This document shows, piece by piece, positions 1 through 45,510 of a stretch of DNA of 64,000 bases. Each line of letters starts with the position of its first letter. Position 1 is the stretch's first letter. Origin of the DNA: Diplonema japonicum (Eukaryota; Protista; Euglenozoa: Diplonemea). Made by a program: the position numbers and the translations under genes. The notes under the pieces are model-generated. The model saw only the letters and a program-made list of their open reading frames with translations. It did not search any database and had not been told where the DNA came from. The DNA is taken from the NCBI GenBank assembly GCA_964019335.1, contig OZ025691.1, forward strand, positions 62,001 through 126,000, read 5' to 3'.

Positions 1-1327
1 GCCTGCTGCACTTTTCTTCCATCGTCTCCCTGTACGCGCTCCTTGCCTCCCTCCCCCAAGAGTAGAGTACTCTTCTGGTCGGTTGGCTGACTCCCCCTCT
101 CAGACTGAAGAACATCGGAACGTGGTCTGAGCCCATTGCTGGCAACGTCCTCCAAGAAGATTTGTCGAACTCTGCGCCGCTCATTACCATGTCCGGAGAG
201 GTTGGGTTTCCTGACGGGTTCAGGATCGTGGCTTCGCTGCTCTTGTTCCATGTGCTGTAGCCCCATCGCAGCATCCAGCTGTGCAGTATTTCTCCCAGCT
301 TATTCGGTGTGCCCCTTTTGTCCCACATCGTGTGGTGGGCGTTCATGTCACCGGCGATGATGGTGTGACTGTCATGAGGCAGCTCTGCCGGGCGGAAATA
401 TTTCTCGGGGGGTGGTCTGTCGTCGCCGTCTCTACCCGTTGTCGGAGGCAGGTACAGGTTGACGAGTCTGTACGGCTTCCGGTTGGGCAGCGAGATCTCT
501 ACGTCGAGTCTTTCCGTCACGTCGCTGGGTTTCTGAATAACTTCGATCTGTTTCGACGGTATCGATTCTCTGACCAGTGTGACGAGACCCCCTCCGCTGA
601 TTTGCTTTCCTCTTTTCACCGGTCGTGTTCGGTCTCGGCGGTATGCCTTGAACCCAGTGAAGACTCCGGTTATATCTTTCGACGGCCTCAGGAAAGTCTC
701 TTGGAGTAGGAGCACGTCGATGTTGTGTGTCTCAATGCCCTTCAGCAGCTGCGCTGTGGTGCTCACCGTTAGGGATCTGACATTGAGAGACAGTACGTTG
801 ATGTTGTTGGGTGGTGGTGTTGTGTTGGAGTGTGCCTGTGAGAGAGAGGAAGTAGAGGGGACGGGAGGGAGAGAGTGTTCAACTCTTGTTGTCTTTTCGG
901 TGGTTGGACCGGGGTTCGCTTCTATGTCCCCGCAGCTCAGTAAGTGTTTTCCGTGCGGACCGCTGGCTGCGGGATTTCTGCGAATGTGAAGATTGCCTGT
1001 GTGGTCACCCCTAGGTCCAGGCCTTTGGATACTGGGTAATACTTCGTCACCGGTGACGGGAGTTTGTGAGTGCTTGTTTGGGGAGGAATTGTGCGTGGAG
1101 AGAGGGAAAGATGAGGGATGGTGATGTGGTGATGATGTGCTGCCTTTGCGGTCACCCCAGCTTCCAGGGCTTGAGAGGCTGGGTAGTACTTCATCTTCGT
1201 TTAGATGGGGTGTAGTGTTGGGGGTTTGGGAGTAGGGACAGGGAGTGAGAGACGGTGTGGGAAAGGGGGTGAAAGGGGTGTTGAATGAGATTGCACGGCC
1301 CTTAGTACTGGCCTTCAACCTTCCTTT
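1..1327 (-). CDS. Retrotransposon ORF2 N-terminus: 2A-like peptide followed by apurinic/apyrimidinic endonuclease (partial)
   Basis: Manual translation (absent from the ORF track): LLSCGDIEANPGP (905-943), then INVLSLNVRSL, IDVLLLQET, YRRDR..GGG, NLYLPP, GDMNAHH, SDH. Upstream in-frame stop at 1328-1330; no in-frame ATG before the APE domain. Confidence 0.9.
937..1194 (-). CDS. Short AUG-initiated ORF between ORF1 and ORF2; probable true start of ORF2 (frameshifted)
   Basis: Contains a duplicated peptide KYYPASQALEAGVTAKA / KYYPVSKGLDLGVTTQA with synonymous and conservative changes in this frame. Confidence 0.5.
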   Translation of the reverse strand: MKYYPASQALEAGVTAKAAHHHHITIPHLSLSPRTIPPQTSTHKLPSPVTKYYPVSKGLDLGVTTQAIFTFAEIPQPAVRTENTY

Positions 1328-2522
1328 TTACGGGAGGGTTCACCTTGTGCAGGGGCGTTGTCTGCGAGGGGGTGGTGTGTAGGGTTGTCTGCCTAGTTGT
1401 GGCAACTCCTACGAGCCTTTCGGCTGGTGGGGGGGTGTCGTAGCATAAAGGTGCTACGGTACCCTTTCTCTCCGGTGTCGCAGCGTGCCTGGGGCAGTCT
1501 GGGGTGTCAGTCCCCTCGTCAGCGCCATCGGTGGACGGCACGTGTCCCCTCTGTTCTGGGGACCCGTCTGCCTCCTCGGAGGTTCCTGGTGGGGGGGCTC
1601 CTGTAGTCAAGTGGATGAGTAATCTGTTCATCCCTTGCTTCAGCTCCTCCACCGACCGCTCCGTCCTCTCCGATGACGCCTTCAAGGAAGAAATCTCCCC
1701 CCTCAGGCCACCAAGCTCGCCCTCCACCAGGCCCACCCTCCTGTTCAGCTCCTCAGTCCTCTCGTCCGTACGCACCCCTCTCATCTCCACCTCTTCCACC
1801 TTCCTCTCGCACGCCTTCTCCCACAGCCCGGCCTGTTCCCTCGCCTGCTCCAACTCGGCAATCCGCCTGTCCATGGCTTCCCTCCAACCCCAGTCGTCCT
1901 CCATCCCGCCTCCCTCTTCCTTCTCGGCGCTCTCCAGCGCCTGGATCCTCGCCTCCAGCTTCTCCTCTCTTTCCCTGGCCTCGGCCTTCCTTTTTGCGGC
2001 TTTGGCCCCCTTCTCCTCTCTCGCCTTCTTCTTCCTCCCCTCCTTCTCGTCGGCCAGCTCCCACACCTGCGACCAGCTCGCCCCCCCGAACTCCCTGCGG
2101 AAGTCTATTTTGGTCCCTCTACGAGACCCACCCGGTAGTTTCCTTTTAAAGGATCCCTTCTGCTCCTCGAACACCACCTTATGGGTAGTGTCTCCGTCCC
2201 TCACTGAGTAGGACTGAAGAGGGGGAGTCCCTGTGGTTACGATGGTGCCTAGGACACCGTCGAACCTCATCGACTTCCCCAGTCCAGCCTGCGCAATGAA
2301 GGCCGCCCACGTGGGCTTGGGGGCAAGCGGGGCTACGACTGCGTCGTAGTGCTTCCGGGTGGGCTTCGTCTTGGGGGTCGTCTCGGGGGGGGTCTTTCTG
2401 ATCACCACCTCGGTGGTTTGCAGCACTAGCTGCGGCGGGTCTTGGTCGGGCTCGCTCCCGTCCGGTAGGGGCCCCTTGGAGGCGCCCGCCTTGCTCGGCT
2501 TCGTCATTTTGTCACTTGACAT
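1302..2522 (-). CDS. Retrotransposon ORF1 (coiled-coil, basic; ORF1p-like)
   Basis: 406-aa ORF with central heptad coiled coil, between the SL and the APE ORF. Confidence 0.75.
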   Translation of the reverse strand: MSSDKMTKPSKAGASKGPLPDGSEPDQDPPQLVLQTTEVVIRKTPPETTPKTKPTRKHYDAVVAPLAPKPTWAAFIAQAGLGKSMRFDGVLGTIVTTGTPPLQSYSVRDGDTTHKVVFEEQKGSFKRKLPGGSRRGTKIDFRREFGGASWSQVWELADEKEGRKKKAREEKGAKAAKRKAEAREREEKLEARIQALESAEKEEGGGMEDDWGWREAMDRRIAELEQAREQAGLWEKACERKVEEVEMRGVRTDERTEELNRRVGLVEGELGGLRGEISSLKASSERTERSVEELKQGMNRLLIHLTTGAPPPGTSEEADGSPEQRGHVPSTDGADEGTDTPDCPRHAATPERKGTVAPLCYDTPPPAERLVGVATTRQTTLHTTPSQTTPLHKVNPPVKRKVEGQY

Positions 2523-2556
2523 TTTTTTTTTTTTTTTAGCCTTCCCTACCCCCCCA

Positions 2557-2594
2557 CAATAAAGTACAGAAACTGTAGCTTTAGAATCGTTGGT
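2557..2594 (-). other. Spliced-leader exon copy (diplonemid type) at retroelement 5' end; partial SL duplicate at 2595-2609
   Basis: ACCAACGATTCTAAAGCTACAGTTTCTGTACTTTATTG carries the euglenozoan SL 3' core CAGTTTCTGTACTTTATTG; not followed by GT. Confidence 0.93.
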
Positions 2595-2626
2595 AGCTTT
2601 AGAATCGTTTTTTTAATAATAGTAAA

Positions 2627-3017
2627 TATTCCACTACCAGGCGGGAGGATCGAAGGGGAGTAGAGAAAACCATTCAAGGGAAAGGGAAAGGGAAAGGGAC
2701 ATCACTTCAAACCAAGAGAGGTGTTTGAAAGTGATTCGTGAAAAGCAGTCTCTGTTACTGAGCCATTGGTCGAGGGGTCCTGGTCCGCTGCTCCCTGTAG
2801 TAAATTACTTGGACCCCCTCACCACGCTCTTTTCATAATAAAATAAAACCGATCCCACCCACCAGGCAGCACCTGGGTCTCGAGGCATTAGCCGCCTCTA
2901 GTAACAAGAGACGACCTCCCAGATTTTAAGAACTTTGGAGGAGTTTCAATTGTGAAAAATTAACCAGCTGACTGTGAAACTCCACCGTCTGCTGGACTTG
3001 TTGGGCTTTCGGGAGCC
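2627..3017 (-). ncRNA. Structured RNA element copy A (pseudoknotted; function unknown)
   Basis: Homologous to 6065-6402, with conserved blocks and compensatory base pairs; G-U pairs favour the minus strand. Confidence 0.6.
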
Positions 3018-3438
3018 AATAAATTCGATTCAATTAAGTTTCGTTCTTCAGTTTTTTTCTTTTTTTTTTTCTTTTTTTTTTCTTCTTTTTTTTTTTTTTT
3101 TTTTTCTTTTTTTTTTTCTCAAAATAAAGGAATTCAAATCAAGCTCGATTGTGTACACCGAAGCTTGAATCATCTGTCCTTTTTTTTCTTTTTTTTTTTT
3201 TTTTCTTTTTTCTTTCTATATGAAAGGTGAGTGGAAAATTTGAATAACACTGGGGGCGGGGGACAGGGGCCTGGTAATGGAAAATAAGGGAAGACACTGG
3301 GGAGGGAGGTGAAAAGAAAGGATAGGAGTGAAGCCAGAGTCGAGAGATTGAGTTAGAAACAATTGCTGTCTGAAGTCGTTTAACAACTTCAGACCTCAAT
3401 GTTTGGAGAGTATAATATATTATAATTTATAAGTTTTT

Positions 3439-6048
3439 TCACAATGTTCCCTGCCGCTCCAAGAGCTGGGCGGTCTTACAGGCGTCGGTCGACAGGAGGA
3501 CTTTGAGGGAAGGAAGGGAGCTACCGAAGATCTGACTCCTTTGGTCGATCCTCTTTTCGTCTTGGCATTCCCGTAGGAGGTGGCTTAGAGTCTGAGGTTG
3601 CGAACATAGATGGCACGGGACCTCCTCGACTGGGGGTATGAGTAGGTATCCGCAAGTGAGTGGGCTCTTCCCCACCCTCAGCCTCATGATCGCCACTTCT
3701 TTCTTTCTGTCCAGCTCCTCGAACTTCTCGAAACTTCCGGCAAACAGCTCCCTGTACGTCTTTGTGACGCCAGTATCCTTCCATAGGCGGAGGTGGCTTC
3801 TGATGACATGCTTCCTCACCAGAGTTTTAACCACCTCAATGTCTGTCTCACGGGTGTGGGCCAGTCTTTCGCTCGCCTCTTTTGCCTTCTGGTCCGCCTT
3901 CTCGTTCCACTTGTACCCGCAGTGACTCGGGACGTATTGAACGATTAGCTTGTGGCCTCTGCCTGTCAAGCTCGCGACCTCCTGCCAGAGTTCGAAGTCA
4001 TCTTTGGAGGCTGCCGACATGTGTCCCTGGCACATCTTCCGTATCACCGACTGCGAATCTGTGCATATCAGAACCATCCCTTGGCTTGCAAGCTTCCTCT
4101 CTGAGAGTCTTGTCGCCAGTCGGATCCCTAGCCTCAGGGCCCTGAGTTCGCATTTGTAGGATGTCGAATACAGTCCACCGCTGATCCCGTAGGCAGCATC
4201 GGACCCGTTGTGCAGCAGGATGGCGGCCGAGCCTCCGTTTTTCCCATCCTTTACGGACCCGTCTGTGAACACCATGCAGAATGCCCGGCCGTGTTTCTCG
4301 CATAACCTGTTCAGGGTGTTCGTTGTTGCCTCTTTCCTGACCTCTTTTGGGTCCGTCCTTTTCACCTGCGTGTCTAGGAAGGGGGAGAGCACGAGTTGCC
4401 CCTCGAATCTTTGCCAGGGTGCAACCGCGAGTCTCCTCATGAAGACGGCGCCCGAGTGAGGTGTGCCCGTCCTCTCTGGGAGTTTGTAGGCTTTCGATGC
4501 CTCTCTCTGTTTGTCAGACCAAGTCCTCCTTGGTAGGAGCTTCTCGTACCTGGTCAGATCCTCCAGAGGCTGAGTCGCCTGGTATGCGGCGGTGTCCACT
4601 TTTCTCATCAGTGACTCGTAGAGCAACAGGCTGTCGTGTTCGATCAGCGCATCCAGGGTCCACAGCCCCGCTTCGTTCAGTGTCGCGAATGTCTCTGATG
4701 ACGCGATGCAGCCTGTGATCTTCACCGCTGCCCTGTATTGAAGCTTCTTGATGCCTTCGTGGGGCGTGTTCCTCCCGCTCGGGAGAAATGACCCGTACAC
4801 GCCCAAGCAGTATCTGAAGACTGGTTGCACATATGTGAGGTATAGAGCCCTCAACACCACCTTCTTGCAACCCCATCTCGTTCCCGCAAGGCAGCTCAGC
4901 AGCCTGACCCTGCTTTCACCTCTTTCCAAGACGTCTCTGGAGTGTTCGGAGAAAAGCATGTCCTCCTCGAAGGTGACTCCGAGCAGCTTTGTTTTTTCGA
5001 CCACCTCGAGTTCTTCGCCGGTCTTGAAAGTTGCTCTGATCTTCCCCTTCAGTGTTCTCTGCGGATAGGAGATGCCAGCAACGGGAAGGAACTCTGTCTT
5101 TCCCTTGGAGATCACCATCGAGTTTCTCGAGCACCAGCTCTCCACAACCCTCAGGATCTTCATCAGTTTCCCATTCAAGCTGTCCAGGTCTTTTTCGTGC
5201 AGCACCACCGCAATGTCGTCTGCGTACATCACGGCATCAATGCCCTCCTTTTCGAACGTCTCTGAGAGGTCGTCCATGTAGATCGAGAAGAGGGTTGGGG
5301 CAAGGATGGTTCCCTGTGGAACCCCACCCGTTATGTGTTCGTGCTTCCCTGTTTCGCCACTCACCTTGACGGCAGCGATCCTCTGGTCTAGGAAAGCGGC
5401 CACCCAGTCCGTAATTCTTTGCGGGTAGCCATTACTCCTCATTTTCGCATTTAGACCCTTGTGCCACACTGTGTCGAAGGCGCCTTTCAGGTCGAAGAGC
5501 AATAGTCCGCCGCAGAACTCATCGTCTCTGATGCGGTTCAGTTTCGTGGTCACTTGCAGGACGTTCTCTTCTGTGGAGCGCCCTTTCCTGAAACCGGACT
5601 GCATTTTGTGCACCCTCTTCACATCTCCCACGTCTTGGTGATAGTCGACCCTTATCTTTACTATCCTCTCCATTGTCTTTGAAATGTTGGAGGTTAGCGA
5701 TATCGGTCTGTACGATGCCGGATCACTTCTTGATTTGCCCTTTCCTTTGAAAAGTGGGATTATGTGTGTGAACCTCCAGTCTGATGGTACCACTCCCTTC
5801 TCCCATGACATATTGAACAGATGGAGTAATGTGTCCATGGCCGTCCCCCCCAGGTGTTTCAGCATCTCGTTGTAGACTCCGTCTGGGCCCGGGGATTTCC
5901 CCTTCTTCAACTGCCTCAGCGCGTGCTTCAGTTCCTCCGTGCTTATCCCTGGGCAAGTGACCCTGTCCCTCAAGTCCTTGATCACTTTGGACTTCCTGTT
6001 TTCACCGTCCAGCATCTTCTTTGTGTCCTTGTTAACCTCAAAAAACAA
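3439..6048 (-). mobile_element. 5'-truncated Ingi/I-group non-LTR retrotransposon: reverse transcriptase + RNase H + CCHC knuckle
   Basis: KSPGPDG, YRPISLTS, QSGFR, DLKGAFD, GVPQG, YADD; RNase H FTDGS/ELRAL/TDSQS/VPSHCG..NEKAD; C-terminal CHLC..H..C; ORF begins abruptly at an (ATT)n junction. Confidence 0.95.
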
Positions 6049-6064
6049 TAATAATAATAATAAT

Positions 6065-6402
6065 TATTCCACTACCAGGCGGGGGGGATGGGGGGCGGAG
6101 AAAGTTGAAACCATAAAAATTGGGAAGGGAAGGTTAAAAACAGTCTCTCTTACTGAGCCATATCGGGGGGGACCTCTTGCTCGTTTGCTCGACCTCTTGT
6201 ATATTTTCCTGGGGCCCCCGACATCCACCTTTCTTATTTTTTCCCCATTCCCCCGCCACGCAGCTCTTGGGCCTCGAAGGCTTCGGCTGTCACCAAATAA
6301 AGACAACCCCAAATATTAAAGGACGGCGATGAGATCCCTAATTTTGATTTATCCAGCCACAGGGACCCCACCATCTGCTGGTTTTGTTGGGCTGTGGGAG
6401 CC
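6065..6402 (-). ncRNA. Structured RNA element copy B, followed by (ATT)n tail (6047-6064)
   Basis: Diverged homolog of 2627-3017 with covarying stems. Confidence 0.6.
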
Positions 6403-7417
6403 TAAAATATAAATTTGAAAAGGAAATGTAAAAGGAAAAGTCAAGTTCAGAACTCAACTTCCACAAAGAAGGGAGGAATGCATAACTAGAAAAGGAGCCT
6501 GGTAGGGAAAATAAAAAGAAAGGGAACCCAATGGGGGAGGGGGAAAAAAGAATTACTGGTTACTATTTCTAAAAAAAAACCCCCCTTCTCAGCTGCGAAA
6601 GATGTTTTTCCAACGAGACTCCCTATCGCGTAATGACGCGGGCGCACCAGGTAGGCCGGCGAGTGCTGTGGAGTCAATCGTCAGCGGGGAGGAAGAGGTT
6701 GTGAGAGGCGAAGTAGAGGAGGGGGACACGTTGGCAGATAACCCACCGGCCTTGGGCTTTCCCCGTGTGCGACAGGTCACACAATGGTGTTCCTTACACC
6801 CCTATGCGGTTCTGCCTGCCTACCCACCAGAAGTCGGACCTTCACTGAGAGACTGTGTCACACAATGGACTTACATCCCTTGAGGTGGTCCACCGTACTT
6901 GACGCCTCCGCTCCGATTCTCTCTCCGCGGGAACCCAGCCTACTCTGGTGGCTGGAGGACCCACTTTGAAATCGAACCCCTCACGTAGAAAACACTGTTG
7001 CGCACTCTGGACATTTTGCATTAATCTTGTTTTCTGTCGGCAAACAGTGCTCCCCACGCTCAGGCCACTTCGCTCGGGCGTTCAGGTCAGCTTCCCCAGG
7101 AAAACCATCAAACGGCGTCTCCGGATCCGGTCCTCGTTCTGGCGTGCAGGAGGCTTCCCCAGGGGATGCCATCCAACACGGCGCTCCGGCTCCGGCCCTC
7201 GGCCGCCCAACGCAACACCGTTCCCCTGCTCCTCCTCTCGAGCTGCCTCTCAGCCGCGCAACCTTCACCACCTGCGCGTTGCCCAGGGACCACCACCGTG
7301 GAGGTGGGCAGCCACCACACACACCGCGTTCGTCTACATGTTCATGTGTGTGTGTAATCGGACCCCTAATCAAAAAATCCGTGACCATCTCTCGGGAGGC
7401 GTTCTTTGGCCCGTTTT

Positions 7418-7448
<31 letters not shown>

Positions 7449-7495
7449 GGGGGGAAGATAGGTAGGGAGTTTGGGAAAAGAAAAAGGGGGGGAAT

Positions 7496-7726
7496 CTATT
7501 TTGGGCTCATGTTCACCCTTGAGCAGCGTTGGTCGGGGGGAGGGTCCCACACTCGGACCATGTTAACGAGCCCGGAGGCCTCGATGAAGGCGCAGACCTC
7601 GGCGGAGTGCTTGGAAAGCAGCGCGCGGAGCGGCAGCCTGGTGTCGAAGAAGGTTCTCGCAGCGGGGGCCAGGGAAGACAGCTCATGAGCAGGTGATCGG
7701 CGTCTAGCGGAGAGTGAACGCCGCAT
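7496..7726 (-). pseudogene. Probable extreme 3' remnant of another Ingi-like ORF
   Basis: LRALLSKHSAEVCAFIEASGL resembles the terminal helix of the neighbouring element (LKVLLSTDACKTAQLLERQGTL); same strand. Confidence 0.35.
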
Positions 7727-8084
7727 GCGGGGCAGGTGAGGTGGTGATCCCTCGAAGCCCTAAGCTTTTCTCTTTAAGGTTCAAAATTTGAGTTGATCTT
7801 AGGCTGGTGCTTAGGTTTTTTTTTTCTCCTGTATCTTTCTAATTCTCATTCTTTTATGCACATTATTTACATACTTTGTTGTACGCACTTAATGTGGAAC
7901 GAAAAATATTTGGACCGCAACCCGTCTCCTGTTTTCCTTGTTTCGTATTCTTGAAGCACACCCCCAAACAAACGACGTCTGAATCCACCTTTTCCTGGAG
8001 AGGTTTTCCTAGACTGCCTAAATGCATGTTGCTGAAAAAAATAATATATTTGCGATACTTACCTAGAGTTGTTATTACATACAC

Positions 8085-11000
8085 ATGAATGACTCAGATT
8101 CAGACGAGGAACGACTTAGAGAGATACGTGAATTCAAGATCACGAGAGATGAAGATGATGTTGTTTTAGATAAGATATTGGATGAGCCTGCAGCTCCAGT
8201 GGCTGTGGTTGAGCAACGAGAAGCGCCGCAGCGGGAGGAGGCAGAGGTTCCCAATGTAACCTTGAGCGACGACGACGAAGATGATGACGAAAAATTTTTA
8301 GCTGACATATTAAATTATGACGAGAACTCTGTGAATGTCCCACTTCAAAAAAGCGTTAGTTCGGTGCCTCAGGGACCCGATCTTATTGAACAGTGCAAAA
8401 AAGAGAAGGAAGAGCCCAGCACCAACGTGGAACAGGCCACGCCCAACCCAGCTCCTATCAACAGTGAGATGTCTTCTGCATCCACTCCACCAACGATTGT
8501 TCTCCCTTCACCTCAAAGCACTCCCTCTCCTTCTCCTTCCCCTCCACCTAAGGAGAAAGGTAGCGGCGTTTTCAGCAATTTCAAGAAACGGTTTTCTTCC
8601 AATAAAAAAGAAACACCGTCACCATCCCCGTCTCTCCCTGCTGTGTCTCCCTCCCCTGCACCCTCCCCGAAGCCTCAGGGCAGGCTGAAAGGCCTTCTTT
8701 CAAAGTCTAAGTCACCTGAGCTTCAGTTGCTGCAGCCATCGCAACCACCTCCACCGCAGCTGTTGTCGCCAGAATCTCAACACGAAGAAACGTCAGAACC
8801 ACCGACTCCGCACAGCGCTGATGTGTTTGAACAGTCACAAGTCTCCGAGGCAGCTAGTAGTGCATATAGTGGGGACAATGTCAAAAGTCCCTTATATAAA
8901 AAAGAGGAAAGGGGGAAACAGGAAAAAGCCCCCGCGAAGAAGAGCAAAGACAAGAATAAGAAACGTGATAGTGTATGGGGCTTCGTCAGCGCAAAAGTAG
9001 CTGATGAGCAAGACTGCAACGACATCGCTAACGGTGCCAACCTGAGCTTTATGGACGAAAGGGAAATGCTGCAGAATATCATTGACAGCATCGCTGACGA
9101 AGCACCGTCAACTTCGGAAAGCGACGATGAGCTCAACGACACACTGACCAACGTGGAGAAAGCGCTGAAGCACGCAGAGCAGATTGCGCAGGACAAGGCT
9201 GAGAAGAAGGACGCTTCTGTGTACTCCAGCATGCAACAACATACAGGACTCGATCTCCTGAAACAGACCGTGTTCCAGGAGATATCTAATGAGCTCAGCC
9301 AACGCAACAATGAGATCGGATGGCCTGTATGCCTCGCAACAGCATCGAATGCAGAACGCCTGTATAAGGGCAACAAAGCAGTATCTTTTGCAGTGGGCAC
9401 TTCTGGGGGCTTCGTGTTGTTATTCACAGCAGCGGGCAAGCGGTGCGGAACCTTGGGGGGTTTGCATGATGACGAGCACAATGCATGCGGTGGGTGCTCT
9501 TGCATCGAGTTGTACCACACGGGCGAAGCACTTCTTGCAGGGTTCCAAACTGGACACCTTGTTTTCTTCGACACCGAGAATGCAGTGCCTTTGAAGATCG
9601 TAAAAGATGTGCGACATCCTTTGCATAGTGTGAAGTGGATCGGAAACGAGCCCAACAGAGCCGCCATGCTTGACATCATGGGCAACCTCAAAATCGTTGG
9701 CTTGAAAAAAGTACTCGGTCTCAAAACAAAGTTCATCACAAGCACGCAGCAGCTAGCAAGCCCCGATCAAGGAATTCTCGAGATCGATGCCACCCTCACG
9801 TACATGACCCACCACGCCATTCTTGTGGCTGCCTCTAGGACATCGGTTCATTTTTACCATTTGAAGACCGCTACGCTTCCAGCCGACTCGTTTTATATGT
9901 ACTCCGTACCGAAGTCTGTGAAGCCGAAACAACAAAATAAAGGGAGAGAGCGGAGTTTAAGCAGGTTTGAGAGAAAAAGGAAGAACACAATGAAAAGACA
10001 AGGGAAGCCAGAGAAAAAGAGCGCAGAGGCCTTGCCTGCAATGTCGTGGCTTAAGAACTGTAGGGGAGGGGGTGAACTTGTGGTTGTGTGGCATGACTAT
10101 CTGTGTGTGTTTAGAGTTGTGGAGTCGGATGGGTCGGACGACTTAAACATGGTGCGCATTGCAGAAGTTGTTCTGAAGCATGCTGTTGTCGCCTGCACGT
10201 TTCTAGCACACAGGGTGGTGGGGTTGATTGACCCCGCTGGGCGTGTTTTCGTAGCTGACCCCCATACAGAGGCTGGCCGCAACGCTATCATTGATGCAGG
10301 CACCACAACTGTCGACCCTGTCACTGTAACGGAAAACAATCTGAAGAGTTTCAGACAAGCTGTAAAAGGCTTCTCTAGGGACACCTCGGCGTCGTTCTTC
10401 ATCTTAAGCAAGAAGCCCATCAAGCTCCACAAAGTCGAGATCAAGACATGGCGGCAGCGCATCGATATCTTAAAACCACAGCGAGGCGCACTTGACTTAG
10501 CCAAGGAGATGAAGTATGACAAGGCGTCTGCTGTGGTTGGGCTGCCCCACCTTGTTTCTACAAGGAAAGCTACGCTCAATGAAGTTATCAAGAAACTGCT
10601 GCGCGAGTACATGGAAGACAGGGTTGCGGCACGCCCTCGTGGGATCGACGCTGAGGACTGGTGGGAGTCCCTCGCCGGCTACACTTTGAACTACTGTTGC
10701 AGTGTCGAGCAGCCGGAACTTATATTTTCGGTGCTGTACCCTTTCTTTGCGAAGGGGGAGTATGCCAACTTGTGGATGAAACTGCTGGAGCCTTGTATCG
10801 CGCTAAAAAAAGTCACTGGTATACCAAACCACTTCCTGTCACTTCTTGTGGAGTGGCTCACGAGGGGCGCCGTGTTGGCTTACCAGCAGCGTCAGGACGT
10901 CTTGCACTGCACAGGTACTACCTTCACAGAAGAGCCGTTTGACGAGATCATCAATCCGTACTCCTTCACGGTAGACCTGTGGGTGCGGGGCGCAGACGAA

Positions 11001-14000
11001 GACGGACAGTGTGCTGCTTCATCCATCAACACGCACGAGCATGCAGGCTGGGCGTTCATCACTGACTGCGGTTCGTGGAAGTTCCTTCTGGGTGATGGAG
11101 CGTCGTGGGTAGAGCTGACACCTGACCCAGCTATCCCGCACTCCACAACTCTTTGGACACGCCTCACTGCGGTGTACCACAGCGGCGAGCTTGTCTTCTA
11201 CATTAATGAAGAGAAGGTGGATTCTACTGAGACGTCTTATGAGCCAAATAGGGACAAAACTGTTCCCCTTATGATTGGTGGGCTGAAGGGTTACCAGGAT
11301 GATGAGATGGATTGGCCGGAAGGCTTCAAGGGATCGGTGAAGGGGCTGATGGTGTATTCCTCACCACACAACGCGTTCCAGCAGCCGATGATCAACGATA
11401 GCGAAAGTGACAACGACGATGATGAGAGTCAGGGTGTGACGACCGACAAGAGCTGGGCCGAGGGGGACAAAGAGAGCAAGGCGACCGCAGGTGACAGGAG
11501 CTGGTATGAGAAGGACAGGGACCACACATCGCTTGACGGTCTCACTCTTGCGGACGTGCAATCCGCAGTAAGCGAGGACGAGGGAGGCATTGGCGAGGTC
11601 AGCGACAACCTTGCTCGAATGGAGATCAGCACGCGTCTTGACAACATCCTTCTCAACATCGAACCCGACGCCATGCACACCGTGGGAGGAGAGTATGCAT
11701 ACGTCCTGAGCATGGCCAAGACTTGGCATTTGTACAAAGCGTTCGCGTCGTACCACAACAAAGAAGAAGGCGGGGTGCTAGGTTTTATCAACCCGCTGTC
11801 GCCGATGTTCATGCTGCTCAGCACACCGATGAAAGGGTCTTCTGTTGCGACAAAGAAAGACGAGACGTGCAACGGCATCGTGACCTCCATCGATGACACA
11901 ACGGCGACCGTAAAGTTCGAACAAGAATCCACAACGTGCTCCATTTCAGACCTGACGGTTCTAAGCAACTCAAAGCCCAACAACAAGGTGCGAAAAACGC
12001 TGTTGGCGTATCTGAAGAATCTGTTCATGGGGAAGAGTTTCCACGGGGTGATACCTCTTAACCAGCGGCTAGACGTCAAAGTGCAAGCTTTAGAGTTCCT
12101 GTTCATTGACGACGGCTCCGACAGCACAATCCCAGCTCATAAGAAAACTTATAGAGTTCTGGAGCAACTCTTACTTACCGACGCCAGCGGTTTGTTGGAC
12201 GCCATATCTATCTCTTTCAGCGACAAGGATGTCAGATCGCCGTGGAAACGGGGTGCGGACTCCAAGGCGACTAATATGCAGTCAAAATTCAGACTCAGCC
12301 GGGACAAAGTGACAGCAATACTAATGAATAAAATGAAGGCGAGCGAATTTGGCCCCTTGGAGGTGACCAGCACGTTCGGGAGAAAGTGGCCCAAGGCAAA
12401 CGATATGGTGCAACTATTCACACTGGTGGCAGACGCAATCTCATCCGAGCTGGTTCAGCCGAAGAGATTCAACAAAGACATGATCAAGCGCATAGTTGCG
12501 CACCTGGCGTACGACTGCACCATGAGAGAGAAAATACGAATGCAGAAACGCATCCAAAGCATGCTAATAGTTGCTTTTGACAAAGAAAAAGGATGCTGGC
12601 CAGAGGACATCACAGACGAAGAGACCATGCAGTTCCACAAGATGGCTCAGGCAGCGGGCTTCACCATGCTATCCATCTACCTCTACAAACGAGAAGCCAA
12701 CTACAGTGCCGTGCTCAGAACGTACCTGCAGGCTCATGAGGAAAACTCAAGCTCTGTGGAACAAGACGGGTTGTTCGTGTTCCTGGAAGAGTCCATGGAG
12801 AACATGGCCGGCGACGTGTCGATGTCGGATCACAGGAAAAAACTACAGAAAGCAATCTTAGAGCACCTGGAGTTCATCGTGAAGGTGGACTCTGCAAGAG
12901 CCGCAAACATCGTTGTAAAGTATCTGCAGTACAAACCGACGGACATCATGGGGACCCTCGACAATGACAAGAGGACGCAGTTCGCGTACCTGAAGGGGAT
13001 GATAGAGGCTTCCAACAACAACGACATCCCCGCCATCGTCTTGGACGCCCCCACTGTCGAAAAGTACATCCGCCTGCTGTGCATGTACGATGAATCAAAC
13101 ATCTTGAACTTCCTGCGCGACCATGAAAGCGTCATTGACATCACGAAGATTCTTCGTGTGCTCGAGAACACCAAAGGCGAGACGGAAGAAGGCTACGGAC
13201 GTGACAATGCCATCGCCTACCTATACTCGCGGATTGGAAAGTACAAGGAAGGCATCAACAGACATTTCAAGAGACTGCAGGTGCCTATGAAAGCCGTCCG
13301 CTCGAAACTTGTCGAGCAAGAGATGAAACGCCGTGACGGAACCAACACTAGCGGGCCTCCGACAACCCCTGCGCTCAGCTACGACACGTACTCTCCTACA
13401 ACGCCTGCATGCTCAAGGCAGAGCAGGCGGAAGAGCACCATGTCGAACTACTCTTTTTTCAGAATGGCGTCTGAGATGTCCGATGGGCGGATGGAGTACA
13501 TGGAAGTCTTGGAGTGCAAAGAGGGCAAGGCAGTGACAGAACTTGTCGAACTGTGCCTCGACATCTGTAAAGACTCCACTAAGGGTGGTGTCGAAGACAT
13601 CTCCGAGGTGTGGTTCACGCTGCTTGAAAAGCTCGTAGAACCGAAGAAAATCCTTTCGGACATCGAACACCAGTCGCGCACCCTGAGCAAGCTAGAGTAC
13701 GTCACCGCTGGTGTAGCATGCATAGCCGTCTGTGTCGTGCTTAGAAGCAACAGGAAATTCAGGTATGTAACGAGCGCATAATATATTTTCACGCAACAAA
13801 GGAACTTGGAACCCGAGAGAAGCATTGCAGACCACGACCAACAGGAAGATGCTTTCGACGAGCTTGCCGAAGTGCAGGTATGACTTTGAGTTGTCTAATA
13901 AAATACCACCCGTAGAAACAAGAGTCGAAGAAACCGCTCAGCTCAAGCTCGATCACTGTTAAGAAACAAACTAAAAAATTGGCGCACGCACTGTCACCTG

Positions 14001-15103: not shown

Positions 15104-15175
15104 GGGCTCAGCAGGGAATCGAACCCTGGACCTCTCGCACCCAAAGCGAGAATCATGCCACTAGACCACTAAGCC
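15104..15175 (-). tRNA. tRNA-Pro(TGG)
   Basis: GGCTTAG/CTGAGCC acceptor stem, CTCGC-TTTGGGT-GCGAG anticodon arm, GGTTCGATTCC T-loop, T7 terminator at 15096-15102. Confidence 0.97.
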
Positions 15176-44400: not shown

Positions 44401-45510
44401 GTCTTCTCCTCTCTAAATTCCTTGTGCACTGTATCACTAGCCATGGCCCGGTCTGTACATCAATTGGGACACCAAAACGGCGAAAACCCAGAGCACACAA
44501 TAACGAAGTTGCACTTCAAACGTACACAGCTTGCCACTTGCTTAAAGAAATTGTATGTGAGGAATATCTTAAAATCGTGAAACACATGATTTCCGGGCGA
44601 AAATCTCTCAGCAGCAGACGTACCCAAGTGGTTACGGGGCTCGCCTGCTAAGCGAGTGTGCTCTGCATGCGCAGGTTCAAACCCTGCCGTCTGCGACTTT
44701 TTTTATTGGGGGAATTTTTCAATTACACGACAGGTCGAGTGTGGTCAGAAATGCCAGGCCAGAGATATCATGTTGGAAATAAGCAGCTCGCAAGGTATAC
44801 ATTATTTTCCTCTTCTTGTACACTATTGTACAGGCACCCCGCCACAAGAAGTTTGGATACGAGGCCTGAACATTGGTGACAACATACCGAAGCTGCCGAG
44901 ACTGAGCGAATTCATTAAAATGATGGAGACAGAGAGGGAACTGGGGAAGGTTTCTTGCTTCGAAGGAAGGCCTTGTTGGATGGAAGGGCTCACTGCTGAA
45001 CAAGAAGGAGAGATCAGCGGAACAGCAGAAGAGGAACTTGCGTATTCGTACCAAGCATTGAGAAGCTTGCTGTGGGCCAATGAAGTGGACGAACAAGTAT
45101 CGAAAGGGATCTTAGGTTCGCTGTCCGACGGATCAGATTTGTGCAGCAGTACGAATTACATCAATTTGGCTGTGGTTGTGCTTGTGAAGGCTGCGAGGAT
45201 TCCCGAGGCGATGACGCTGCTAGAGCCGCATCTTTCGCCTTCTCGAATGCTCGCCTTTGCGTTGACTCACTGCAACACGGATCCTTCACACTGGAAACCC
45301 CTTGTGACGCACTTAATCACCACTAACAACAAGTCCCTTCTTACGTTGCTGCTCAATAAACTTGCTACACACCTCTCCCTTCAGGGCTTCATCGACCTCC
45401 TCCCCGCCGACGGCAACACCAGATTCTTCTTGCCATTCATAACAGTAGCATTCGACGCGCACAAGACTACCCTCCTTCAAGACCCCACAGCGGACGACGC
45501 CCTCGCGTGA
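41412..45510 (+). CDS. HPS3: HPS3-like (BLOC-2 subunit)
   Basis: LETYPLR and C-terminal FIDLLPADGNTRFFLPFI resemble HPS3 from memory; introns 44553-44611, 44675-44733, 44795-44833 give a continuous frame. Confidence 0.6.

What the first reader, a model, noticed from the sequence alone, without database searches (positions are those of the whole stretch)
2627..6402. Unrecognised ~340-390 nt pseudoknotted RNA with covariation at both retroelement junctions
Copies A (2627-3017) and B (6065-6402) are diverged yet keep the same pairings on the minus strand. (1) 5' hairpin GGCT/AGCC. (2) Stem CCAGC/GCTGG whose loop pairs downstream as a pseudoknot (A GGAGTTTCA/TGAAACTCC; B GGGGTCCCT/AGGGATCTC). (3) CTGGG/CCCAG versus TTGGG/CCCAA, enclosing a hairpin (GTCGTCTCT/AGAGGCGGC versus GGTTGTC/GACAGCC). 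(4) GGTGAGGGG/CCCCTCGACC versus ATGTCGGGGG/CCCCCGATAT. (5) A long closing stem ending CCCGCCTGGTAGT. Near-invariant blocks are ATGGCTCAGTAA.AGAGACTG and CCTGGTAGTGGAATA, followed by an ATT-type tail. I cannot match it to a known family. Candidates are an RT-recognition 3' element, a new ribozyme or a SINE.
Basis: partly seen in the sequence, partly recalled or inferred. Interest (0 to 1): 0.85.

Follow-up and report, generated by a model that had tools for sequence, protein, structure and literature searches.

The report
Structured 3' tail of tRNA-targeting LINEs
The two "unknown RNAs" are the folded, pseudoknot-containing 3' end modules of a LINE retrotransposon and of a non-coding hitch-hiker element in a euglenozoan protist, most likely the handle by which the LINE's reverse transcriptase picks its template; this is a known kind of element, here unusually large and well supported by compensatory base changes.

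Summary
Copies A (2627-3017) and B (6065-6402) exist on the minus strand, end in ATT repeats, and match no Rfam family.

They are not free-standing RNA genes.
- A is the last ~390 nt of the 3' UTR of an APE/RT/RNase H LINE (families F1/F2).
- B is the last ~340 nt of a ~1.32-kb non-coding element with a discrete 5' end, a non-autonomous partner.

I found four more diverged tail types in the same genome: C on LINE F4, G2 on LINE F3, G on a sister non-autonomous element, and C2. With these:
- The hairpin stem (CCAGC/GCTGG = CCGGC/GCCGG = CUGGC/GCCAG) is kept by compensatory changes.
- So are its loop-to-downstream pseudoknot helix, stem 4, and a long-range closing helix (GCUG.../...CAGU just before the invariant GG[A/U][A/U]).
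- The 5' hairpin (1) is unsupported.

G·U pairs outnumber A·C 27 to 2, which fixes the strand. Tails track their RT lineage, and non-autonomous elements carry the tail of a partner LINE.

Best reading (about 0.78): an RT-recognition 3' module of a stringent-type LINE. SINE is partly right, for B only. A ribozyme in the tail is not supported.

Side findings:
- These elements pile up head-to-tail just upstream of tRNA genes.
- The B element begins with an HDV-like ribozyme candidate.

The scan had not reported this tail on other DNA.

The parts
2627..3017 (-). Tail module A: 3'-terminal ~390 nt of the 3' UTR of the F1 LINE copy
   Evidence: All A copies continue upstream into the F1/F2 3' UTR.
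2937..2995 (-). Pseudoknot domain of A. S1 is 2991-2995 with 2964-2968. S2 is 2975-2986 (in the S1 loop) with 2937-2948.
2633..2870 (-). Domain of A enclosed by the long-range closing helix. The 5' strand is 2858-2870 (GCUGCCUGGUGGG) and the 3' strand is 2633-2645 (CCCGCCUGGUAGU). Invariant GGAAUA follows at 2627-2632.
   Evidence: 55/63 cells paired against 15-42 when slid. The second tier GGGAUCG/CGAUCCU is shown.
2608..2626 (-). ATT-type repeat (2615-2626) plus short A run (2608-2614) ending the F1 copy
   Evidence: The repeat number varies from 2 to 9 between copies.
3018..3438 (-). Upstream part of the F1 3' UTR, with a variable A-rich tract (about 3050-3220)
3439..6036 (-). 5'-truncated ORF2 of the F1 LINE (RVT_1 and RNase_H). 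The full-length relative P0001 (1327 aa) also has an APE endonuclease domain.
6065..6402 (-). Tail module B: 3'-terminal ~340 nt of the non-autonomous element
6328..6381 (-). Pseudoknot domain of B. S1 is 6377-6381 with 6353-6357. S2 is 6361-6372 with 6328-6339.
   Evidence: The loop/downstream duplex has -22.9 kcal/mol, z about -4.7 against shuffles.
6071..6264 (-). Domain of B enclosed by the closing helix. The 5' strand is 6252-6264 and the 3' strand is 6071-6083. GGAAUA lies at 6065-6070.
6047..6064 (-). (ATT)6 tail of the B-carrying element
6047..7369 (-). Whole ~1.32-kb non-coding, non-autonomous element that carries tail B. It is flanked by the target-site duplication TTTTTTGA (7370-7377 and 6038-6045).
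   Evidence: At least 13 of about 25 copies share the 5' end at 7366-7370. About 14 full copies exist in the genome. There is no ATG-led ORF of note. The duplication was read.
7242..7366 (-). HDV-like ribozyme candidate at the 5' end of the B-carrying element (outside the finding)
7377..7764 (-). Fragment of the 3' end of another LINE family (F10b type, 'D' tail), cut off where the B element begins
2557..2607 (-). Spliced-leader sequence (with a partial 5' duplication) that heads the next, full-length LINE (family F3)
   Evidence: The same head is seen in L082 and L097.
1..2556 (-). 5' part of the full-length F3 LINE (ORF1 at 1302-2522). It runs off the window and ends in tail type G2, 12 nt before tRNA-Pro.

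Best explanation
Copies A and B are cis-acting 3'-terminal RNA modules of non-LTR (LINE) retrotransposons. A belongs to an autonomous APE-RT-RNase H LINE (families F1/F2). B belongs to a 1.3-kb non-coding element that presumably borrows that LINE's proteins.

In the element's sense RNA (window minus strand) the module folds into four parts:
1. A 5' pseudoknot: a 5-bp hairpin whose loop pairs with a stretch 10-30 nt downstream.
2. A variable hairpin.
3. A large domain closed by a long-range helix whose 3' strand ends just before an invariant GG(A/U)(A/U).
4. An (AUU)n repeat, usually followed by a short A run.

The inferred mechanism is as follows. The element's ORF2 protein recognises this fold, as in stringent-type LINEs. 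It starts target-primed reverse transcription at or in the AUU/A tail, and slippage there gives the variable repeat number. Integration happens a few bases upstream of tRNA genes, so successive insertions stack head to tail.

Shown here: position, copy structure, conservation, covariation, strand, and the link between tail type and RT lineage or partner. Inferred: binding by the RT and any requirement for retrotransposition.
For: 1. Position. The module is the last part of the 3' UTR of four LINE families and ends in (ATT)n. A/A2 follow F1/F2 ORF2. C follows F4 ORF2 in four loci. G2 follows F3 ORF2 in 13 or more loci.

2. Covariation.
- S1: 35/35 cells paired, and 2 of 5 positions carry double changes.
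- S2: A against B has 4 of 12 positions double-changed and still paired. In C/C2/G/G2, 98.3% of cells are paired against 38-53% when slid. There, 5 of 15 pairs changed on both sides against 0-1 when slid, and 0 of 500 shuffles reach the score. The cognate loop/partner assignment is the most stable of 120 permutations.
- Closing helix: 55/63 cells paired against 15-42 when slid, with double changes at 3 positions.
- Stem 4 has 3 double changes and stem 3 has 1 between A and B.
- RNAalifold on G against G2 alone recovers S1 and the closing helix.

3. Strand. There are 27 G·U pairs against 2 A·C.

4. Partner logic. The B and G tails sit on two non-autonomous elements whose bodies are 76% identical. 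Their tails belong to different tail clades, B near A (F1/F2) and G near G2 (F3).

5. Independent insertions. Target-site duplications show separate insertion events.

6. Precedent. Stringent LINEs recognise their cognate 3' tail stem-loop through ORF2 (PMC4176376).
Against: - There is no direct evidence of protein binding or of any requirement for transposition.
- Only about six independent tail lineages are available, all from one genome, so no R-scape-type statistic could be run.
- Several alignments across types had to be anchored by hand, because MAFFT and a single-sequence covariance model failed to put the helices in register.
- Minimum free energies are not better than shuffles.
- The two near-invariant blocks of A and B are not explained by the fold.
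- Pseudoknot stem S2 (9-12 bp) with short connecting loops may be sterically strained, so S1 and S2 could be alternative rather than simultaneous pairings.
- No raw RNA reads were available.
Confidence: 0.78

Rival explanations
1. The module serves the element's RNA in some way other than RT recognition: 3'-end formation or polyadenylation, RNA stability, export, or control of translation. Its structure is conserved for that reason.
For: The structure is conserved, but nothing here shows what binds it. Most copies carry a short A run after the ATT repeat, so the RNA may be polyadenylated downstream of the module.
Against: Non-autonomous, non-coding elements carry the tail type of a specific LINE partner, and related bodies carry different tails. 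This is what template selection by a partner's RT predicts. A generic stability or processing role does not predict it.
Confidence: 0.1
2. The ~350-390-nt module is itself a SINE-like retroposon that moves alone and merely lands next to other elements.
For: One B copy starts at the module boundary (L040). Short tail-only fragments are common.
Against: All A copies that reach the module start continue into the F1/F2 3' UTR. The 5' ends of shorter copies are scattered, as in ordinary 5' truncation. Thirteen or more of about 25 B copies start about 960 nt upstream of the module at one point. There is no tRNA, 5S or 7SL-like head.
Confidence: 0.05
3. The tail, or its pseudoknot, is a self-cleaving ribozyme.
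For: It is pseudoknotted, conserved and sits in a retroelement. HDV-like ribozymes are known in LINEs.
Against: No ribozyme family matches at E<=10. Retro-copies do not begin or end at the pseudoknot. The module is retained intact in copies, so it is not removed from the template.
Confidence: 0.03
4. There is no functional RNA structure. The shared pairings are leftovers of common descent plus chance complementarity in G+C-rich sequence.
For: Folding energies are not better than shuffles. There are few lineages. Parts of the alignment were anchored by hand.
Against: Slid controls fall to 38-53% paired against 98%, and to 15-42 of 63 against 55 of 63. Several positions carry three or four different standard pairs. 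Cognate partners beat all 119 other assignments. G·U greatly exceeds A·C.
Confidence: 0.04

Closest known systems
3' tails of stringent-type LINEs shared with partner SINEs (eel UnaL2/UnaSINE1, zebrafish ZfL2; PMC4176376)
   Same: A conserved structured element lies at the extreme 3' end, followed by a short tandem repeat. It is shared between an autonomous LINE and non-autonomous partners. Tail type is specific to the LINE lineage.
   Different: Those tails are a single stem-loop of some tens of nt. This module is 340-620 nt with a pseudoknot, a variable hairpin and a long-range closing helix. The partner elements are 1.3 kb with no Pol III-type head. The host is a euglenozoan, and binding was not tested.
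R2 retrotransposon 3' UTR RNA (Rfam R2_retro_el)
   Same: A large (about 250 nt) folded 3' UTR that the element's own RT recognises to start target-primed reverse transcription. Its structure is better conserved than its sequence (my knowledge of the R2 literature).
   Different: There is no sequence or model match. R2 has a restriction-like endonuclease and targets 28S rDNA. These elements have an APE endonuclease and RNase H and sit upstream of tRNA genes.
ingi/RIME and L1Tc/NARTc pairs of trypanosomatids
   Same: These are Euglenozoan APE-RT-RNase H LINEs with short non-coding partners that share element ends. The 5' 'Pr77' end of L1Tc/NARTc is an HDV-like ribozyme (my knowledge). Here the non-autonomous elements also start with an HDV-like candidate.
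   Different: Those elements end in poly(A) and are not known for a structured 3' module. Here the autonomous LINEs start with a spliced leader instead of the ribozyme module. No homology was shown.
tRNA-gene-targeted non-LTR retrotransposons of dictyostelids (TRE5, NLTR-A; PMC5006619)
   Same: Insertion occurs upstream of tRNA genes in a fixed orientation. NLTR-A inserts about 4 bp upstream and carries an RNase H domain.
   Different: The host supergroup is unrelated, and I found no report for Euglenozoa in that paper. The relation of the RTs was not tested.

Membership tests
Stringent-type LINE 3' tail (RT-recognition element) | Lies at the extreme 3' end of an autonomous LINE, directly before a simple-repeat tail | tested here: met
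   A/A2 follow F1/F2, C follows F4, and G2 follows F3 ORF2. All end in AGTGG[AT][AT]..(ATT)n.
Stringent-type LINE 3' tail (RT-recognition element) | Shared with non-autonomous partner elements | tested here: met
   B (near A) and G (85% to G2) sit on 1.3-kb non-coding elements.
Stringent-type LINE 3' tail (RT-recognition element) | Conserved secondary structure maintained by compensatory change | tested here: met
Stringent-type LINE 3' tail (RT-recognition element) | Bound by the cognate ORF2 protein and required for retrotransposition | not testable with these tools
   Needs binding and transposition assays.
R2 3' UTR element (Rfam R2_retro_el) | Match to the family model; R2-type element (RLE endonuclease, 28S target) | tested here: not met
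   No Rfam hit at E<=10. The ORF2 relative has an APE-type endonuclease.
SINE | Head derived from tRNA, 5S or 7SL with an internal Pol III promoter | tested here: not met
   No such Rfam match in 2400-7800 at E<=10.
SINE | Short non-coding retroposon with a discrete 5' end and a LINE-derived tail | tested here: inconclusive
   The B-carrying element has a discrete 5' end, is non-coding and has a LINE-like tail. At 1.32 kb it is longer than usual SINEs. Tail A is not a separate element.
Self-cleaving ribozyme (for the tail) | Match to a known ribozyme fold, or copy ends at a cleavage site | tested here: not met
HDV-like ribozyme (for 7242-7366, side finding) | Nested double pseudoknot P1/P1.1/P2/P3/P4 with a G1·U closing pair, C-rich L3, GGGCAAC, and a C in J4/2 | tested here: met
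   In alignment A11, 234/234 cells are paired against 28-57% when slid. P2 and P4 each carry one double change. The core motifs align to RF02682 and RF00094.
HDV-like ribozyme (for 7242-7366, side finding) | Rfam gathering score | tested here: not met
   Scores are 20.8-28.2 bits against a gathering score of 44. The model cannot span the ~50-nt J1/2 insertion, so it pairs a wrong P1 strand.
HDV-like ribozyme (for 7242-7366, side finding) | Self-cleavage 5' of G1 | not testable with these tools
   One copy (L133) starts exactly at G1, next to its target-site duplication. Others carry 3-5 extra bases (TTA, TTTA or TTTAA) before G1.
tRNA-gene-targeted non-LTR retrotransposon | Insertions at a fixed short distance upstream of tRNA genes, in the same orientation | tested here: met
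   Of 91 distinct tail ends, 24 have a same-strand tRNA starting 18-37 nt (one at 3 nt) after the last conserved base. The chain in this window ends 12 nt before tRNA-Pro.

The most novel reading that the evidence does not exclude
The tails form a modular specificity code. Each RT lineage (F1/F2, F3, F4) has its own version of one pseudoknotted fold, and non-coding parasites switch LINE partner by swapping tails. The two classes of element define their 5' ends by different RNA-processing routes: spliced-leader trans-splicing for the autonomous LINEs and an HDV-like ribozyme for the parasites. All of them home to a site 5-13 bp upstream of tRNA genes. This would be the first such system described in Euglenozoa.
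Probability: 0.35. Interest if true: 0.7.

Novelty: new member of a known kind. Interest (0 to 1): 0.5.

Why it matters
Structured 3' tails are how most LINEs choose their own RNA and how SINE-like parasites hijack them. Few tails have a fold supported by covariation, and none that I know of comes from diplonemid-like euglenozoans. The one published diplonemid genome paper states that transposable elements still await rigorous analysis (PMC10161547).

This genome holds several co-resident RT lineages, each with a diverged version of one fold, together with matched parasites. That makes a natural swap experiment for RT-template specificity.

The surrounding biology may interest transposon specialists more than the tail itself:
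- tRNA-upstream homing;
- spliced-leader-headed LINE copies;
- a ribozyme-headed parasite.

Tried and rejected
- MAFFT alignments of all seven tail types, of the pseudoknot domain or of the full length, were not in register across types. They could not be used for pair counting, so only the C/C2/G/G2 core (A9) went to the pair-count tool.
- A covariance model built from tail A alone (R1) found A, B and weak C2, G, C and G2 hits. It treated their S2 helix as an insertion, so its alignment was useless for covariation.
- Folding energies against shuffles were not significant on either strand.
- A metagenome scan with the generalised terminal motif gave 23 hits. All were A+T-rich chance matches without the C-rich upstream region or the pseudoknot motif.
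- The public runs were available only as contigs, with none on record as RNA. Expression, RNA ends and processing could therefore not be read.
- I first assigned tail B to LINE family F3 and an 'E' tail to F3. Both were wrong, because the reference locus was a chain of elements. This was corrected.
- The 'D' tails (families F6 and F10b) share only the AGTGG..ATTATT end and not the pseudoknot, so I left them out.
- Decayed A copies (85-95% identity) were not used as evidence, because their changes arose after insertion.
Full report
**What is in the window**

All of this is read on the minus strand, in order:
- A fragment of a LINE 3' end (7764-7377).
- A 1.32-kb non-coding element (7369-6047) that ends in copy B plus (ATT)6.
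- A 5'-truncated LINE (6036-2608). It comprises ORF2 with RVT_1 (E = 5.5e-36) and RNase_H, a 420-nt upstream 3' UTR with a variable A-rich tract, copy A, an ATT-type repeat and a short A run.
- A spliced-leader sequence (2607-2557) heading a full-length LINE of another family, with ORF1 at 2522-1302.

The leader's last 19 bases are the kinetoplastid/diplonemid type. The whole leader differs at two positions from the 'Euglenozoa 14' leader listed in PMC3795323, which I recall as Diplonema's. The genome (62.5 Mb) is therefore a euglenozoan, probably a diplonemid relative.

A transcriptome in EukProt holds the full-length ORF2 of the first LINE. This is P0001, 1327 aa, 99% identical, with an APE endonuclease domain. 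It also holds part of the second LINE (P0004).

**Check of the observation**

- A and B align at 73% identity, with the two stated near-invariant blocks. Those blocks are far over-represented in the genome.
- Within each type the copies are 95-100% identical. They are recent, and within-type variation says nothing about structure.
- Rfam gives nothing for either copy.
- Folding energies are no better than shuffles.
- Everything therefore depends on finding independent diverged lineages.

**What the copies belong to**

The genome holds at least ten non-LTR families, judged by ORF2 identity.
- Tail A follows F1. A 95-99% identical A2 follows F2, although the two ORF2s are only 75% identical in protein.
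- Every A copy that reaches the module's start continues upstream into the F1/F2 3' UTR. Shorter copies have scattered 5' ends. A is therefore part of the LINE, not a separate element.
- For B, 13 or more of about 25 copies begin at one point, 7366-7370. None extends further.
- That 1.32-kb unit has no meaningful ORF. It is flanked in the window by the duplication TTTTTTGA (7370-7377 and 6038-6045). B is therefore the tail of a non-autonomous element.

**More lineages**

The 3' ends of other families and the flanks of the fetched loci gave four further tail types:
- C, after F4 ORF2 in four loci.
- C2.
- G2, which follows F3 ORF2 at 13 or more loci, including the F3 element that starts in this window.
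- G.

G sits on a sister of the B-carrying element. The two bodies are 76% identical, while the tail is 93% identical to G and unrelated to B beyond the shared motifs.

All types share four features:
- a CCCAAC motif before the hairpin;
- a U(C/U)CUU(A/U)A-like motif after the pseudoknot;
- a G(N)GCUG motif;
- the ending AGUGG(A/U)(A/U), 1-5 nt, then (AUU)n.

**Covariation**

- S1 reads CCAGC/GCUGG in A, B and C2; CCGGC/GCCGG in C and G; and CUGGC/GCCAG in G2. All 35 cells pair, and two positions carry double changes.
- S2 is the pairing of the S1 loop with a downstream stretch, which makes the pseudoknot. Its sequence differs completely between types yet always pairs.
  - A has GGUGGAGUUUCA/UGAAACUCCUCC.
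  - B has GGUGGGGUCCCU/AGGGAUCUCAUC.
  - C has GGGGaCGGCUC/GAGUCGCCCC.
  - G and G2 have GGGGaUGCCUC/GAGGUACCCC.
- Between A and B, four of the 12 S2 positions changed on both sides and stayed paired.
- On the tool-made alignment of C, C2, G and G2, S1 plus S2 give 98.3% paired cells against 38-53% when the partner is slid. Five of 15 pairs changed on both sides against 0-1 when slid. No shuffle of 500 reaches the covariation score.
- In an alignment-free test, the cognate pairing of loops with downstream stretches is the most stable of all 120 assignments.
- The closing helix starts with an invariant G·U, C-G, U-A. Its 3' strand ends at the AGU of AGUGG. It has 55 of 63 cells paired against 15-42 when slid, and double changes at three positions.
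- RNAalifold on G against G2 alone predicts the closing helix, its second tier and S1.
- Stem 4 has three double changes between A and B, and a positional counterpart in G and G2. Stem 3 has one double change. By eye in the sequences, every type has some hairpin between the same two conserved motifs; I did not count pairs for these.
- The 5' hairpin GGCU/AGCC never varies where present and is missing in C and C2, so it is unsupported.
- Over all helices there are 27 G·U pairs and 2 A·C pairs. The fold therefore belongs to the sense RNA.

**Limits**

- There are about six lineages, all from one genome.
- Helices across types were anchored by hand on conserved motifs.
- With short connecting loops, S1 and S2 may alternate rather than coexist.

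**Function**

The module is the last thing before the repeat at which reverse transcription must start. Its type follows the RT lineage. Non-coding elements carry a partner's tail type, and two related non-coding bodies carry tails of different LINE partners. This is the pattern of stringent LINEs, whose ORF2 protein binds the cognate 3' tail structure (PMC4176376).

I therefore read the module as the RT-recognition element. The variable ATT number (2-9) is the product of slippage at initiation. Binding itself is inferred, not shown.

**Why it sits 'at both junctions'**

- Of 91 distinct tail ends in the loci fetched, 24 are followed by a same-strand tRNA gene. Its start lies 18-37 nt (one at 3 nt) after the last conserved tail base. 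Chance would give far fewer than one.
- The chain in this window ends with the F3 element's G2 tail, (ATT)4, an A run and GGGAA, then tRNA-Pro.
- An unoccupied tRNA-Pro gene in the window (15104-15175) has TTTTTTGAGGGAA before it. That is the very sequence duplicated around the B element.
- B, then F1, then F3 therefore inserted one after another 5-13 bp upstream of one tRNA gene, each pushing the earlier ones upstream.
- Other duplications (CAGCCCAAAAT in L040, AACTTTGA in L133) confirm separate insertion events.
- tRNA-upstream homing of non-LTR elements is known from dictyostelids (PMC5006619). That paper does not mention Euglenozoa.

**Side finding: a ribozyme candidate**

- The first 125 nt of the B-carrying element (7366-7242) match HDV ribozyme models below threshold, as do related elements. 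Scores are 20.8-28.2 bits against a gathering score of 44.
- The model mis-assigns P1. If the element's first bases GGGG(U/C)C pair with GG(U)CCCU, a complete HDV-like double pseudoknot results.
- That fold has a ~50-nt hairpin in J1/2, a C-rich L3, the motifs GGGCAAC and GGCU(A/G)AGA, and a 6-bp P2.
- On eight sequences, all 234 cells pair, against 28-57% when slid. There is one double change each in P2 and P4.
- The predicted cleavage site is the element's 5' end. One copy starts exactly there beside its duplication. Most others carry 3-5 extra bases (TTA, TTTA or TTTAA), which remains unexplained.

**Comparison and verdict**

This is a new member of a known kind: a LINE 3' recognition module shared with non-autonomous partners. 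It is much larger and more elaborate than the single stem-loops of L2-type LINEs. It is functionally comparable to the R2 3' UTR without being related to it. It is not a new class of RNA, not a stand-alone SINE, and not a ribozyme.

Noticed in passing
window 7242-7366 (minus); also L124-L130, L133: HDV-like ribozyme candidate at the 5' end of the non-autonomous elements, with a ~50-nt J1/2 hairpin. Rfam scores are 20.8-28.2 bits, below the gathering score of 44. All 234 cells of the proposed double pseudoknot pair, with double changes in P2 and P4. Most genomic copies carry 3-5 extra bases (TTA, TTTA or TTTAA) before the predicted G1; one copy starts exactly at G1.
   Followed up: partly
L002-L053, L123; window chain ends at G000:C44:58308-58379: LINE and partner tails lie just upstream of tRNA genes in the same orientation. 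This holds for 24 of 91 distinct tail ends, with tRNA starts mostly 18-37 nt after the last conserved base. Repeated insertion builds head-to-tail chains. Unoccupied tRNA genes also exist (window 15104-15175 and 44614-44695).
   Followed up: partly
window 2557-2607 (minus); L082 2298-2334, L097 2270-2325 (sense): Full-length LINE copies begin with the spliced-leader sequence, sometimes with a partial duplication of it. The retrotransposed template was therefore a trans-spliced RNA.
   Followed up: partly
window 3050-3220 (minus); L080 1620-1830; L123 1330-1360 (sense): The 3' UTRs of F1, F4 and F3 each contain internal A-rich tracts of variable length upstream of the tail module. In F1 the stretch before the tract resembles the end of a 'D'-type tail (CCCCCAGTGTTATTC). 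This suggests that tail modules were appended to older poly(A)-ended elements.
   Followed up: no
L085 1920-2200, L097 1995-2250, L095 2380-2680 (sense): Other LINE families have different tails. The 'D' type ends in CCCCCCAGTGGTTATTATTGC(A)n. The 'E' type ends in ...TGGTATTTTG(A)n. F7, F8 and F10 end in plain poly(A). Several of these also abut tRNA genes.
   Followed up: no
window 2700-2745 (minus): Tail A carries a perfect 12-bp hairpin (AUCACUUUCAAAC/GUUUGAAGUGAU) in a 43-nt stretch absent from tail B. It is a lineage-specific expansion inside the closed domain.
   Followed up: no
window 8085-13781 (plus): An intron-less 1898-aa ORF with Vps8 beta-propeller, Laminin_G_3 and Vps8 TPR matches lies next to the retroelement chain.
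   Followed up: no
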